The notes beneath the pieces are model-generated. The model saw nothing but the letters and a program-made list of their open reading frames with translations, was not told the DNA's origin and did not search any database. A stretch of 64,000 bases of DNA from Trichosphaerium sp. ATCC 40318 (lineage: Eukaryota > Protista > Tubulinea), in assembly GCA_038496445.1 (NCBI GenBank), contig JALMLS010000342.1, positions 62,001 through 126,000 on the forward strand, written 5' to 3'. Below are positions 38,676 to 42,577 of the stretch, in pieces. Position numbers and translations under genes: made by a program. The stretch's first letter is position 1. Each line of letters begins with the position of its first letter.

Positions 38676-41600
38676 ATGGCAGAAGAGAATCCAGTCGACA
38701 TTGAAGCGTTTGTGGACGGCGCGCCTGTACTTTTCTTTGTTTTTCGTTTTTGTAGTGATTGTCGTAGGAGGACGCGGAAGTTGAGTCTGATGAAGAGTAC
38801 GACGATCCAACGCGCAAACGTAAACCAGTTTCTCCCCCTAAACCCGTAAGCGCTTTCACGCCTGTAGCAATAAGTAAATACGACCTAGGTGGAAAAGAAA
38901 GACACGCCAAATCTTGATCAACTAAACAATTTACTTGACAAGGCTAAATTGTACTCTCAGTTTATCGGTCTACAAATGGGCCAAAAAAATGATGATTTGC
39001 CTGAGGTACTTTTAATTAAGAGTTTTTGTGGCACTTTTAAAAAGAAATCGCCAAAAACAGAGATTCCTGACTATTATTCAAGGAACTCGACTCGGATCAA
39101 TTCAAAGTTTTCGAGAATCCTAATGAGAAGGAGGAATTGACTCAATCTTCTATTATTGAAGGAGGGGAGTTACGTAAATATCAATTAGTTGCTGTAAAAT
39201 GGTTGATACAATTATACGAAAATGGTATGTGGAATTTGTCAATTTTTGAATCACAACTTTAAACTTATAATGTTTTATTCGATAAAAACAATATAAATTG
39301 GTAATATAGTTATTTTAACTTGTTTAGGTATGAATGGCATACTTGCAGATGAGATGGGTTTAGGTACACAAGAAAATCAAATTTGGATTTTTTTTTCCTA
39401 TCTTTTCTTACTTTTCTTCTCTTCAGGTAAAACCATCACGACTATTGGATTTTTAGCACATCTATGGGAACGTGACGTTAAAGGACCATTTTTGGTAGTA
39501 GCACCGCTTTCCACTCTATCGAATTGGGTCAAGGAATTTAAAAAGTACTTTTGTTGACTTTTTTGATATCTTTTTTACCGCTCAACTAAACATTTATTGT
39601 AGATGGGTTCCGCAAATACCTGTACATTTGTATCACGGTACAAAGCAAGAACGTCATGAACAACGAGCTAGTATGGTCCGAAATAAGACAGGACAACTTC
39701 CAGTCCTAGTAACGAGTTATGATATTGTGATGCGTGATAGGGCCTATCTACAGCATTATCATGTGCGTCACTTACGATTTAACGACCTTTGCTGACGGTT
39801 TTATAGTGGAAATACCTTGTTGTTGATGAAGCGCACAGGCTAAAGAATTTCGATTGTAAATTAATTAGAGAGTTGCGTACTCTAAAAACACAGAATAGGT
39901 AAAACGTTTTCCACATCTGAAAAAAAAAGGAATTATTTGTTAACAAAACACCTTAGGATGCTCTTAACTGGTACTCCGTTACAAAATAATTTGCTTGAGC
40001 TATGGAGTTTGCTCAACTTTATCCTTCCTGATATCTTCGATAACGTACAAAACTTTCAAAAATGGTACGCCTCAAAGTTTTTTTTGAATCGTTGAAAAAA
40101 AACAGTAGGCTCACTTCTTATTTGCTAGGTTCGATTTTGATAGTCTTGTTGGCCTAGCGGCTGATGACTCAGAGAAGCAAGATAAGAAAGATAACGCAGT
40201 AAAGGATTTAATTCAAAAATTACATATTATTCTACAACCTTTCTTATTAAGGTAAACACGCACTCTGAAGAGTGGTCTCGGCTTTTAAATTATTACGAAA
40301 CGTCATTAATCGAACTTTTAAAGGCGATTGAAGACAGACGTCGAGAAATTAGCTATTCCTCCCAAGAGGGAAGCTATTATATACTGTGACTTTCAACCAG
40401 TACAGCGAGCATTCTATAATCTCATGTTAGAGCGTGATAGAGAAAAACTTTACACTAAAGGTTCGTAACTTCGTAATATTAATTTTCCCGTTATTCCTTT
40501 GCTCCTTTTTTTCCTTTTTTTCCATTTTTCCATTTTTCCTTTTTTCCTTTATTCCTTTATTCCTTTTTTCCTTTTTTCCTTTATTCCTTTACTCCTTTAC
40601 TCCTTTTTTCCCTCTCGTTTATTCAGATTGATTTTAAAATTTATTTCCACTAACAATCCTAGTTGGTACTATACGCATATGTAATCTTATTATGCAACTA
40701 AGAAAGATTTGTAATCATCCTTTCTTGTTTAATGAGCACTTTGATATCTTTAACGCTTGGTGGAAAGACTGGGTAAAGAACGGCAAAGCTGACGCTATGG
40801 AAATAGAGCCAAAAGAAGAGATGAAAAACGAGAAAAAAACAAAGAAGACAAAAAAGGCAAAGAAGGTACTAATGCGCTTTAGAAAAGTTGGCAATTTTTA
40901 TTTTTTTACTAACGTGTATTTGCTAGAAGGATTTAGCTAATGGAAAGAAGCGAAAGAGGTCTAAAGAGGAAATCGATGAGGATGAAGATAAGCGTCAAAA
41001 GAGAGCGCGTGTTGATGTAAACTACAGCGAGCTCAACGATAATGTTATAAATGATACTATCATGGCAAGAGAAGAGAGATTAGAAGGATTAGCTTCGGTA
41101 ACTGTCTCATAGTATGAAAAAAAACTCAACAATTAATTGTCTTCTAGAAAAACAAGCATAAGCCAAAACCAAAGATTAAAGGAAAGAGGAGCGGATACGT
41201 TTTTTTCTGCACTGAAAATTATCAAAAGGTACGCAACTTGAGGTTAACGTTGTGACGCTGAAGCTTAACTGTTGTTTGTTACCTAATAGGTTAAGGATGA
41301 AGATGATTCCATGTCATTTATACGTATGACTACAGAACTTGGAAAACGATGGAAAGAGCTTCCAGAGGAGGAGCGAGAAGTGCGTTTAAATTTAGCTGGT
41401 ATCATTTTTTTTCTCATTATTTTCTTCTTTGTAGGTTTACAACAAAAAAGCTGAGAAAGATTCTGTAAGATACCAATTCGAGCTTGCAACTCAACAAATG
41501 AAAGATGAACCAGAACTCGTAAGAATTTTATGAACATACGACAACATTATGAAAAACTCCTTTTTTTTTTGTTGAAAAGCTCTTACATTGTTGTAGATGA

Positions 41601-42577
41601 TTAAAGATCCTAAAAAGTATGTCCAAGCGATTATTGCATGTAGCGGGAAGTTTAGAGTACTCGATAAAATGTTAAAGGCCTTCCGCCAAAACGGTCACAA
41701 GGTACGTTTGGATAAATTCTTTTGTTTTTTTGCGCAACATTGTATTCTTGCATAGTGTTGATGGTTGTTGTTTGTAGGTCCTATTATTTTCTCAAATGAC
41801 AAGAGTACTTGATATACTTGAAGATTATCTTGAGATATCAGGACTTGGTTATTGTCGTATAGATGGTTCTGTACCACAAAAAGAGAGAGAAAGAATGGTA
41901 ATTATCATTTTTTTTAGAAAGAATTTCCTGAGTTCTGTTGATTGACCCTTTATCCGACAGATTGACGAGTTTAATGAAGGCGAAGAAAAATTTGTGTTTT
42001 TGCTTTCTACAAGAGCAGGTGGCTTGGGTATTAATCTTACATCTGCTGATACAGTAATTATTTTTGATTCTGATTGGGTACAACAAACAAACACACAAAC
42101 TTACCAAAAAATTAAATGTACTCACTTGATACTGTTTTAGAATCCACAAAACGACTTGCAAGCGCAAGATCGATGCCATCGTATTGGACAAACGAAACCA
42201 GTAGCTGTTTATCGTCTTATTATCGCTAATTCAGCTGATGCAAAGATTTTGCAACGTGCTACAGCAAAGTTAAAGTTAGAGCGTCTAGTAGTATCTAAGG
42301 GTATTGAAGATACTTTATACTACTGTATTGTGACACTAATACCTACCTAGGACGTTTTAAGCAAGGAAGAGACGTAAAACTCATTAGTAACGAAGATGTA
42401 ATGGAAATCCTAGCAAATGACGCTGATGAGCTTGGTACAGCAAGTAGCTCTATAGATAATGAGACATTGGACTATATTACAATTCGTGAGAATCTTGAAG
42501 CTTTATTTGAAAAGGAAGGCGCTGGATACATTGGAAACGGCTACCGTTTACTAGAGGAAGTCAAAATTGAATTTTAA
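38676..42577 (+). CDS. HELLS: SNF2-family chromatin remodeller, HELLS/LSH/DDM1 subfamily, with internal HMG-box
   Basis: N-terminal [102 protein letters not shown] and [15 protein letters not shown]. Confidence 0.92.
40491..40612. repeat. Intronic degenerate 8-mer pyrimidine tandem repeat (TTCCTTTW-like)
   Basis: About 15 imperfect copies of TTCCTTTT/TTCCTTTA/CTCCTTTA inside the ~200-nt HELLS intron. Confidence 0.85.

What the first reader, a model, noticed from the sequence alone, without database searches (positions are those of the whole stretch)
40692..41650. HELLS/DDM1 remodeller with a complete HMG-box inserted inside the SNF2 ATPase
Seen in sequence: between QLRKICNHP and SGK there are about 200 codons in frame, joined entirely by phase-0 introns. 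They encode a Trp-rich segment, basic NLS-like tracts, [10 protein letters not shown], and a full HMG-box spanning 41169-41488: [67 protein letters not shown]. Established knowledge: this position is the SNF2 major insertion site, about 20 aa in plant DDM1 and long in INO80/SWR1. HELLS/DDM1 normally has no DNA-binding accessory domain, and HELLS is activated by CDCA7. Inference: this is a self-targeting remodeller in which a DNA-bending HMG-box grips linker or distorted DNA, possibly replacing a CDCA7-type partner. The symmetric phase-0 boundaries fit exon shuffling and would allow isoforms with or without the HMG-box. I do not know of this architecture being described.
Basis: partly seen in the sequence, partly recalled or inferred. 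Interest (0 to 1): 0.88.

Follow-up and report, generated by a model that had tools for sequence, protein, structure and literature searches.

The report
HELLS-type remodeller with built-in HMG box
This expressed protist gene encodes a HELLS/DDM1-type chromatin-remodelling motor with a histone-gripping motif and a DNA-bending HMG box built into the middle of the motor; the design is shared by many amoebae but appears never to have been described.

Summary
A clean 21-exon GT-AG gene (38676-42577, + strand, 839 aa) encodes an intact SNF2 ATPase. It has 205 residues between the NHP of QLRKICNHP and SGK. Those residues hold an HMG box that passes Pfam (50.2 bits, cut-off 25.4). Spliced contigs from three studies join 15 of the 20 introns exactly as modelled. 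One contig without a mismatch runs from exon 12 through all HMG exons into exon 17.

The architecture is not unique to this genome. About 20 protein clusters share it. All the named ones are Amoebozoa: Physarum, Pelomyxa, Mastigamoeba, Copromyxa, Nolandella, Pyxidicula and Arcella. Two relatives encode it as one uninterrupted ORF.

With the insertion removed, these proteins form one clade inside HELLS/DDM1. They keep the family's C-terminal arginine motif. They lack the HELLS N-terminal coiled coil and the HELLS midloop.

My reading is a HELLS orthologue with its own nucleosome grip, made of an acidic-patch anchor and an HMGB-type DNA binder. Independence from CDCA7 is plausible but untested. 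Exon shuffling and optional isoforms are not supported. I found no paper describing this design.

The parts
38676..42577 (+). Whole gene: 21 exons, 839-aa HELLS/DDM1-type SNF2 ATPase with a composite insertion
   Evidence: Exon model with GT..AG at all 20 introns. 15 introns confirmed by spliced contigs from three studies.
38922..38963 (+). N-terminal motif [14 protein letters not shown] (aa 55-68), shared with DDM1 and HELLS. Only 54 acidic, proline-rich residues precede it, so there is no HELLS-type coiled coil
   Evidence: Motif positions compared with named DDM1/HELLS. The same region of the Physarum relative aligns to the DDM1 N-terminus.
39083..40718 (+). ATPase lobe 1 and helical domain 2 up to QLRKICNHP (exons 4-12, introns included). 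Motifs GLGKT, DEAH and TGTPLQN are intact. LLRR-to-NHP is 68 aa, so there is no HELLS midloop
   Evidence: Translation. Length comparison with HELLS (123-129 aa) and DDM1 (73 aa).
40719..40865 (+). Start of the insertion (rest of exon 12): aromatic stretch [17 protein letters not shown], then a Lys-rich tract
   Evidence: Relatives show FLFDxxFDxF(Y/H)xK(F/Y/W). In the AlphaFold model of relative P0014 this segment continues the preceding helix (H359-374).
40927..41097 (+). Exon 13: basic NLS-like tract, acidic run and the Arg/Tyr motif
   Evidence: Weak, sub-threshold Pfam SnAC similarity (E 0.002, 19.1 bits, cut-off 27).
40990..41031 (+). [14 protein letters not shown] (aa 477-490): candidate acidic-patch anchor of the HELLS-midloop type (arginines plus a tyrosine anchor)
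   Evidence: It lines up in one block in 11 of 14 family members. It resembles vertebrate and coral HELLS midloops, for example shark RPKRRSRKQVDY against Physarum RPKRIRKKVDY. The function of the HELLS motif is described in preprint 10.1101/2023.08.09.551721.
41148..41518 (+). Exons 14-16 (with introns 14 and 15), which carry the HMG box
   Evidence: Junctions 41228|41290 and 41379|41435 lie within one contig.
41169..41488 (+). HMG box proper (aa 520-587; the Pfam HMG_box core is aa 526-584), HMGB type
   Evidence: Pfam 50.2 and 45.5 bits. The best solved relatives are HMGB1 boxes A/B, NHP6A, TFAM, HMGB2/3, SMARCE1 and SSRP1. Its Trp is invariant in the family.
41597..41701 (+). Exon 17: conserved linker [15 protein letters not shown], then SGKF, the start of ATPase lobe 2
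   Evidence: The consensus is (I/L)I.DP..Y before SGK.
41778..42300 (+). ATPase lobe 2 (exons 18-20) with intact motifs IV-VI ([23 protein letters not shown])
   Evidence: Pfam Helicase_C on single exons. Translation.
42452..42496 (+). C-terminal family motif [15 protein letters not shown] with R810, aligned to HELLS R803 and DDM1 R724
   Evidence: Alignment with named HELLS and DDM1. The motif is called family-defining in 10.1101/2023.08.09.551721.
40461..40662 (+). Intron 11 (202 nt), which holds a pyrimidine-rich TTCC/TTTCC low-complexity repeat
   Evidence: Sequence. Many unrelated contigs pile up here at depth 44-189. It is spliced out in X2 (joint 40460|40663).

Best explanation
The gene encodes the HELLS/DDM1 (Lsh) type nucleosome remodeller of an amoebozoan-like protist, in the form typical of a conserved amoebozoan lineage of this family. 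The ATPase is intact. Three points are shown here. First, the major insertion loop between the two motor lobes has grown from about 22 to 205 residues and holds, in order: an aromatic helix, a basic Arg/Tyr motif, a disordered charged linker, an HMGB-type HMG box, and a short conserved linker into lobe 2. Second, the exons are joined in one mRNA. Third, the layout is old and inherited vertically. The rest is inferred. The motor would sit at SHL2 as DDM1 and HELLS do. The Arg/Tyr motif would dock on the H2A-H2B acidic patch, as the near-identical midloop motif of animal HELLS does. The tethered HMG box, which is not sequence-specific, would bind and bend nearby nucleosomal, linker or distorted DNA. 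This would raise affinity and lower the barrier to DNA movement, much as HMG-box proteins are reported to help other remodellers. The family lacks the N-terminal coiled coil that keeps HELLS inactive until CDCA7 binds. It is therefore probably constitutively competent, like DDM1, and carries its own DNA-binding module instead of borrowing one.
For: Gene model and intact motifs. HMG box: 50.2 bits; HMGB1, NHP6A and TFAM are the best solved relatives. One transcript: (X1 record 1 spans exons 12-17 with no mismatch; X2 and X3 agree). Conservation: searches give about 20 clusters, and 16 of 19 insertions match HMG Pfam models. Uninterrupted ORFs are P0006 at L001:6001-8166 and P0013 at L002:4001-6196. 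Family placement: HELLS 563 and DDM1 552 against SNF2H 498 bits for P0014; DDM1 505 and HELLS 490 against SNF2H 437 for P0019. In the tree built without the insertion, the HMG type is one clade (SH-aLRT 95) inside HELLS/DDM1 against ISWI and CHD (96), and its subclades follow Tubulinea and Physarum plus Archamoebae. The C-terminal Arg motif is. The acidic-patch motif is aligned in 11 of 14 members and resembles HELLS midloops, whose arginines and Y518 bind the acidic patch and stimulate remodelling (10.1101/2023.08.09.551721). No coiled coil: 54 residues with 8 prolines precede the N-terminal motif in this protein, and only 5-20 residues in several relatives. The role of the HELLS coiled coil is from PMC12885070. 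The AlphaFold model of relative P0014 shows a three-helix HMG box (H440-451, H458-470, H474-502) behind a disordered linker at 377-433.
Against: There is no biochemical or binding evidence; every functional step is inferred from resemblance. The residue at the position of the HELLS arginine anchor (Y-8) is Lys in this protein, and the motif is missing or weak in P0013, P0017 and P0014. A loose regular-expression test for the motif was uninformative, because shuffled insertions matched 12-63% of the time. The HMG box evolves fast (24% mean pairwise identity against 57-67% in the lobes). Only ISWI and CHD outgroups were available for the tree. Balamuthia and Acanthamoeba, also Amoebozoa, have a canonical short-insertion HELLS, so an old paralogue is not excluded. 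The run type RNA is a guess in the records, so a processed DNA copy could in principle give spliced contigs. The window protein could only be tested in pieces or through relatives at 47-49% identity.
Confidence: 0.6

Rival explanations
1. It is an old paralogue, not the HELLS orthologue. The HMG-bearing clade would be a separate amoebozoan (or older) SNF2 lineage that arose by duplication, works in something other than DNA-methylation support (for example repair or replication), and coexists with or replaced canonical HELLS.
For: Balamuthia and Acanthamoeba (XP_004353580 in the supplement of PMC10538959) have canonical HELLS with a short insertion. Balamuthia falls outside the HMG clade, and forcing it inside costs 21.6 log-likelihood units. 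HELLS homologues in Neurospora are known not to be needed for methylation (PMC4714748, abstract).
Against: The AU test does not reject one amoebozoan clade (p 0.075). For Physarum, Mastigamoeba and Pelomyxa only the HMG-type protein appears among the best 120 HELLS-like hits of two searches; a canonical paralogue should have scored within that range. The family's C-terminal motif and N-terminal motif are both kept.
Confidence: 0.2
2. The insertion is a tolerated spacer. The HMG box and the basic motif would be decaying or serve only as a nuclear-localisation or solubility tract, with no role in remodelling.
For: The linkers are low-complexity and poorly conserved (13% identity). Insertion length varies from 134 to 280 aa, and some HMG boxes carry long internal loops (P0018, P0021). 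Three of 19 insertions fail the Pfam HMG models at E 0.01.
Against: The box remains detectable in 16 of 19 diverged members, with an invariant Trp and a conserved RSAF/Y start. Domain order and the flanking DP..Y linker are fixed across Tubulinea, Myxogastria and Archamoebae. All five insertion exons keep the reading frame open in an expressed mRNA.
Confidence: 0.1
3. It is an autoinhibitory module. The HMG box and its acidic and basic linkers would fold back on the DNA-binding cleft or between the lobes and gate the motor until a nucleosome cue releases them, taking over the job of the missing N-terminal coiled coil.
For: The site lies between the two lobes, where an insert can control lobe closure. 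In DDM1 the major insertion loop contacts the H4 tail (10.1101/2023.08.09.551721). In HMGB1, acidic tracts next to the HMG boxes are known to mask them (my own knowledge, not checked here). The insertion has 42 acidic and 50 basic residues.
Against: No data here point to a fold-back. The AlphaFold model gives low confidence for the linker and no reliable domain placement. This reading can coexist with the best explanation.
Confidence: 0.1

Closest known systems
HELLS (Lsh/PASG) of animals and fungi
   Same: It has the same SNF2 subfamily core, the N-terminal LxxLLxxxxxYSxF motif, the C-terminal motif with the conserved Arg (R803 in HELLS, R810 here), and an Arg-rich motif with a tyrosine anchor of almost the same sequence as the HELLS midloop.
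   Different: It has no N-terminal coiled-coil domain, which is the autoinhibition and CDCA7 site. It has no midloop in helical domain 2 (68 aa against 123-129). The Arg/Tyr motif lies after the NHP helix, in the major insertion. It carries an HMG box, which HELLS lacks.
DDM1 of plants
   Same: It has the same subfamily core and C-terminal motif. The N-terminus is short or disordered, without the HELLS coiled coil, and DDM1 is reported to be active on its own. The Asp eight residues after NHP (DDM1 D508, an H4-tail contact) is kept as D415.
   Different: The DDM1 major insertion is about 22 aa and has neither an HMG box nor an acidic-patch motif.
INO80/SWR1 and Rad5/16-type SNF2 proteins
   Same: They have a large functional insert at the same major insertion site. 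This is my own knowledge; the INO80 exception is stated in 10.1101/2023.08.09.551721.
   Different: Those inserts recruit RuvBL/Arp modules or carry a RING finger. None carries an HMG box, and they belong to other subfamilies.
HMG-box partners of remodellers acting in trans (HMGB1 with ISWI/ACF, Nhp10 in INO80, SMARCE1/BAF57 in BAF, SSRP1 in FACT)
   Same: They pair a non-sequence-specific HMGB-type box with a nucleosome motor. SMARCE1 and SSRP1 boxes are among the solved relatives of this box.
   Different: There the box is a separate subunit or cofactor. Here it is covalently placed inside the ATPase polypeptide.

Membership tests
HELLS/DDM1 (Lsh) subfamily of SNF2 ATPases | Intact SNF2 motor motifs I-VI | tested here: met
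   [29 protein letters not shown] and [11 protein letters not shown] are all present in the spliced protein. Pfam Helicase_C matches on single exons.
HELLS/DDM1 (Lsh) subfamily of SNF2 ATPases | Closer to HELLS and DDM1 than to other SNF2 subfamilies | tested here: met
   P0014: HELLS 563 and DDM1 552 against SNF2H 498 bits. P0019: DDM1 505 and HELLS 490 against SNF2H 437. In the tree the window protein sits inside a clade with named DDM1/HELLS against ISWI and CHD (SH-aLRT 96). Caveats: the bit scores come from relatives at 47-49% identity, and only two outgroup families were available.
HELLS/DDM1 (Lsh) subfamily of SNF2 ATPases | C-terminal motif with the conserved arginine (HELLS R803, DDM1 R724), called family-defining in 10.1101/2023.08.09.551721 | tested here: met
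   R810 in [15 protein letters not shown] aligns with the LLDRSDL arginine of named HELLS and DDM1. Other family members keep L(D/N)R. The window copy is the most diverged.
HELLS/DDM1 (Lsh) subfamily of SNF2 ATPases | N-terminal LxxLLxxxxxYSxF motif before the motor | tested here: met
   It lies at aa 55-68, and the same motif occurs in named DDM1, HELLS and fungal proteins. From my own knowledge, ISWI has a similar motif, so it is not exclusive to this subfamily.
HELLS proper (animal type, CDCA7-dependent) | N-terminal coiled-coil domain (CC1/CC2) that autoinhibits and receives CDCA7 | tested here: not met
   Only 54 residues, with 8 prolines and many acidic residues, precede the N-terminal motif. 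Several relatives have 5-20 residues there. In the P0014 model the first helix already contains the motif. No coiled-coil predictor was run.
HELLS proper (animal type, CDCA7-dependent) | Midloop insertion in helical domain 2 carrying the acidic-patch anchor | tested here: not met
   LLRR-to-NHP is 62-68 aa in the family, against 123-129 in vertebrate and coral HELLS. The equivalent motif is found instead in the major insertion.
HELLS/DDM1 (Lsh) subfamily of SNF2 ATPases | Short major insertion (about 20-30 aa) between NHP and SGK | tested here: not met
   It is 205 aa here, against 20-29 aa in 58 canonical relatives. This is the variant feature.
HMG-box superfamily, HMGB (non-sequence-specific) type | Profile match above the curated threshold over nearly the whole domain | tested here: met
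   HMG_box gives 50.2 bits against a cut-off of 25.4, over profile positions 5-63 of 69. HMG_box_2 gives 45.5 against 22.4.
HMG-box superfamily, HMGB (non-sequence-specific) type | Closest to HMGB/NHP6/TFAM boxes rather than SOX/TCF; Ser rather than Asn in the RS(A/G)(F/Y) start | tested here: met
   The best solved relatives are HMGB1 A/B, NHP6A, TFAM and HMGB2/3. No native SOX, LEF or TCF protein is listed; the only SRY entry is the SRY/HMGB1 chimera 2gzk, matched over its second half (residues 93-157). GKRSGYVFF aligns with GKMSSYAFF of HMGB1 box A. The Ser/Asn rule is from my own knowledge.
HMG-box superfamily, HMGB (non-sequence-specific) type | Three-helix L-shaped fold | tested here: inconclusive
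   The AlphaFold model of relative P0014 shows three helices (440-451, 458-470, 474-502) at pLDDT about 65-83. The window protein itself was not folded and no fold search was run.
HMG-box superfamily, HMGB (non-sequence-specific) type | DNA binding and bending | not testable with these tools
   This needs gel-shift, circularisation or FRET assays.

The most novel reading that the evidence does not exclude
The amoebozoan enzyme would be a self-sufficient HELLS. Its internal acidic-patch anchor and HMG box together would do what the CDCA7-coiled-coil partnership does in animals. The HMG box would supply recognition of distorted or non-B DNA, the kind of substrate on which CDCA7 is reported to activate HELLS. 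Heterochromatin or repeat targeting and activation would then be built into one polypeptide. A further consequence is that the acidic-patch anchor predates opisthokonts, which contradicts the published view that no HELLS orthologue outside opisthokonts has one.
Probability: 0.2. Interest if true: 0.8.

Novelty: new variant of a known kind. Interest (0 to 1): 0.6.

Why it matters
HELLS and DDM1 are the remodellers that let DNA methyltransferases reach nucleosomal DNA. How they are targeted and switched on (CDCA7, coiled coil, midloop) is an active question. This lineage is a natural experiment. It has no coiled coil and no midloop, yet the same type of arginine/tyrosine anchor, plus a DNA-bending HMG box, is wired into the loop between the motor lobes.

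It gives three direct tests:
- whether an intramolecular HMG box speeds or directs remodelling;
- whether the acidic-patch anchor works from another loop;
- whether such an enzyme can do without CDCA7.

It also extends the known range of the HELLS acidic-patch motif beyond opisthokonts. It offers a rare-genomic-change marker within Amoebozoa: present in Tubulinea, Myxogastria and Archamoebae, absent in Acanthamoeba and Balamuthia.

Tried and rejected
- Full-database HMMER search with exon 12. The window's own protein is not in the library. The search did, however, yield the first relatives, P0004 and P0006.
- Word-indexed search with the HMG region of P0006. It found only P0006 itself.
- PDB searches with exon 21 and exon 3 alone. 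No hits; the pieces are too short.
- SnAC domain idea for exon 13. The hit is sub-threshold (E 0.002) and is not repeated in any of 19 relatives at E 0.01. I replaced it with the much closer HELLS-midloop resemblance.
- Regular-expression enrichment test for the basic-Tyr motif. The pattern was too loose: shuffles matched 12-63% of the time, and the script then failed. I relied on the positional alignment instead.
- Exon shuffling and optional exons. Rejected as unsupported.
- Domain placement in the AlphaFold model. Not used, because the linker has pLDDT under 50 and pTM is 0.60.
- Species identity. Not determined. Scan notes only say 'probable amoebozoan'. The gene tree agrees but is not proof.
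- Whole-protein tools could not take the spliced 839-aa protein by reference and I did not type it. Whole-protein tests were therefore run on relatives, and on the window protein only inside scripts.
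Full report
**1. What is in the sequence**

The region lies in an intron-rich eukaryotic gene on the + strand. I assembled a 21-exon model, 38676-42577. Every intron is GT..AG and 41-202 nt long. 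The CDS is 2520 nt and the protein 839 aa.

QLRKICNHP is aa 399-407 and SGK is aa 613-615. The 205 residues between them are encoded by the tail of exon 12, exons 13-16 and the head of exon 17. The SNF2 motifs I-VI are intact.

The spliced 74-aa segment scores 50.2 bits on Pfam HMG_box (cut-off 25.4, E 3.7e-13) and 45.5 bits on HMG_box_2.

**2. Expression and splicing**

Laying their contigs showed exact intron removal at 15 of the 20 introns.
- X1 record 1 (619 nt, no mismatch) runs from 40724 in exon 12 through exons 13, 14, 15 and 16 and 51 nt into exon 17.
- X3 and X2 repeat many of these joints, and X2 also joins exon 11 to exon 12.
- No contig skips an HMG exon or treats these exons as a separate gene.

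Two caveats apply. The runs are only guessed to be RNA, and contigs hide rare isoforms. Exact GT..AG removal nevertheless indicates cDNA.

**3. Relatives**

The window's own protein is not in the protein libraries. A full HMMER scan with exon 12 returned P0004 and P0006. Both have SNF2-rel_dom, HMG_box and Helicase_C in that order.

Two further searches and a cluster look-up brought the set to about 20 clusters.
- Tubulinea: Pyxidicula operculata, Nolandella sp., Copromyxa protea and Arcella intermedia.
- Others named: Physarum polycephalum, Pelomyxa schiedti (an NCBI entry named 'ATP dependent chromatin remodeling factor') and Mastigamoeba balamuthi.
- Unnamed: Logan, ENA, JGI and MMETSP sequences.

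In the profile search these proteins score 1027-1182 bits and the next protein scores 931. After that come named DDM1 and HELLS/PASG proteins.

Sixteen of 19 insertions match HMG Pfam models on their own. P0006 (L001:6001-8166) and P0013 (L002:4001-6196) are uninterrupted genomic ORFs, so the architecture does not depend on any splicing model. The closest relatives of the window protein are P0013 and P0014, at 47-49% identity over the full length.

**4. Which SNF2 subfamily**

For P0014 the best solved structures are HELLS (563 bits) and DDM1 (552), ahead of SNF2H (498) and ISWI (492). For Physarum P0019 the scores are DDM1 505, HELLS 490 and SNF2H 437, and its N-terminus aligns to the DDM1 N-terminal motif.

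I built a tree after cutting the insertion out of every sequence.
- The 15 HMG-type proteins, including the window protein, form one clade (SH-aLRT 95).
- That clade sits inside a clade with named DDM1, HELLS and fungal Lsh proteins, separated from the ISWI and CHD outgroups (96).
- Within it, Tubulinea group together (94), and Physarum groups with the Archamoebae (90). This is the pattern expected from vertical descent.

The C-terminal motif that a cryo-EM preprint calls family-defining, with its conserved arginine, is present as R810.

Balamuthia has a canonical short insertion and falls outside the HMG clade. Acanthamoeba HELLS, as aligned in the supplement of PMC10538959, also has a short loop. 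An AU test does not reject joining Balamuthia to the HMG clade (p 0.075). Orthology with later gain or loss therefore remains possible, and an old paralogue is not excluded.

**5. Anatomy of the insertion**

The alignment of 14 members shows a fixed order.
- (a) An aromatic stretch directly after NHP, FLFDxxFDxF(Y/H)xK(F/Y/W). It is helical in the model of P0014.
- (b) A variable charged linker.
- (c) A basic motif ending in Tyr and an acid. In the window it is [14 protein letters not shown], and it lines up in 11 of 14 members.
- (d) A second linker.
- (e) The HMG box, with an RSAF/Y start and an invariant Trp.
- (f) A conserved (I/L)I.DP..Y segment leading into SGK.

Mean pairwise identity is 24% in the box, 23% in the motif, 13% in the linkers and 57-67% in the lobes. 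The box is closest to HMGB1 boxes A and B, NHP6A, TFAM, HMGB2/3, SMARCE1 and SSRP1, which is the non-sequence-specific class.

**6. The Arg/Tyr motif**

Preprint 10.1101/2023.08.09.551721 reports that the HELLS 'midloop' binds the nucleosome acidic patch through R507, R510 and R513 and a tyrosine anchor, Y518. The midloop is an insertion in helical domain 2. The preprint reports that these residues stimulate remodelling. It also states that no midloop is seen in any HELLS orthologue outside opisthokonts.

I extracted that region from named HELLS sequences.
- Shark HELLS: RPKRRSRKQVDYDD
- Varanus HELLS: RPKRRSRKVISYRE
- Coral HELLS: RAKRKSRQDISY
- Physarum family member: RPKRIRKKVDYSEE
- Window protein: [14 protein letters not shown]

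The resemblance is close. However, the amoebozoan proteins lack the midloop itself: LLRR-to-NHP is 62-68 aa, against 123-129 in HELLS. They carry the motif one helix later, in the major insertion. This is either relocation of an older element or convergence. Either way, an anchor of this type exists outside opisthokonts. That it binds the acidic patch here is inference.

**7. What is missing**

HELLS is held inactive by an N-terminal coiled-coil domain and is released by CDCA7 (PMC12885070). In the window protein only 54 acidic residues with 8 prolines precede the N-terminal motif. In several relatives only 5-20 residues do. The HELLS-type switch is therefore absent. This fits, but does not prove, an enzyme that needs no CDCA7.

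Earlier unchecked notes of this scan report, elsewhere in this genome, a CDCA7-type finger in a multidomain protein, DNMT-like genes and CpG-decay footprints. I could not test them.

**8. Exon shuffling and isoforms**

I compared intron positions with Pelomyxa.
- Seven or eight core intron positions are shared, including the three phase-0 introns in lobe 2.
- None of the five insertion introns is shared.
- Two relatives have no introns in the gene at all.
- Twelve of the 20 introns are phase 0.

The phase-0 run is therefore not a signature of a recently shuffled module. The insertion is far older than the present intron pattern.

**9. Literature**

Four full-text searches found no mention of an HMG box in a HELLS/DDM1 or other SNF2 motor. 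A check of the HELLS-CDCA7 coevolution paper and of a eukaryote-wide chromatin survey also found none. The coevolution paper sampled four Amoebozoa, and none of them belongs to the lineages that carry the insertion.

**10. Verdict**

The subfamily call is right. The design is a new variant of a known kind, and it is present in databases but apparently undescribed. The mechanism (an acidic-patch anchor plus an HMGB-type DNA grip, replacing the coiled-coil/CDCA7 logic) is a reasoned inference awaiting biochemistry.

Noticed in passing
window 40461-40662: Intron 11 is the longest in the gene (202 nt). It is filled with a pyrimidine-rich TTCC/TTTCC-type low-complexity repeat. Many unrelated contigs from the runs pile up on it (depth up to 189), so it is a common genomic or transcribed repeat motif.
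   Followed up: partly
window 38676-42577 (all 20 donor sites): Twelve of 20 donor sites have C at position +4 (GTAC nine times, GTGC twice, GTTC once). This agrees with another note on this window about unusual 5' splice sites.
   Followed up: partly
L004:3001-6780 (Pelomyxa schiedti) against the window gene: Seven or eight intron positions in the ATPase core are shared between this gene and its Pelomyxa relative, so they are old. Two other relatives (L001, L002) have lost all introns in the gene.
   Followed up: partly
P0026, P0033, P0043, P0028 (unnamed EukProt and JGI proteins): A separate group of HELLS-like proteins has a 69-78 aa major insertion with a basic PY(R/K)QKRK tract but no HMG box. 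It branches near the HMG clade and the Heterolobosea. It could be an intermediate or independent elaboration of the same loop.
   Followed up: no
P0109 (basidiomycete-like JGI protein), helical domain 2: A fungal HELLS-like protein carries RRAKRGVNYQVDE in the midloop position. Gigaspora has RALQRKTYRE there. This agrees with the report that the tyrosine anchor is also present in fungi.
   Followed up: no
window 24854-25666 (+), 28459-29616 (-), 49373-50782 (+), 63379-63891 (+): Long ORFs elsewhere in the window match an F-box, an RRM and leucine-rich repeats (LRR_6, LRR_4). None is related to the finding.
   Followed up: partly
P0118 (Balamuthia mandrillaris, named 'Transcription activator BRG1' by its source): This protein groups with HELLS/DDM1, not with BRG1. 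It has a 117-aa Ser/Pro-rich filling of helical domain 2 and a precomputed Response_reg hit. The source's name looks wrong.
   Followed up: no
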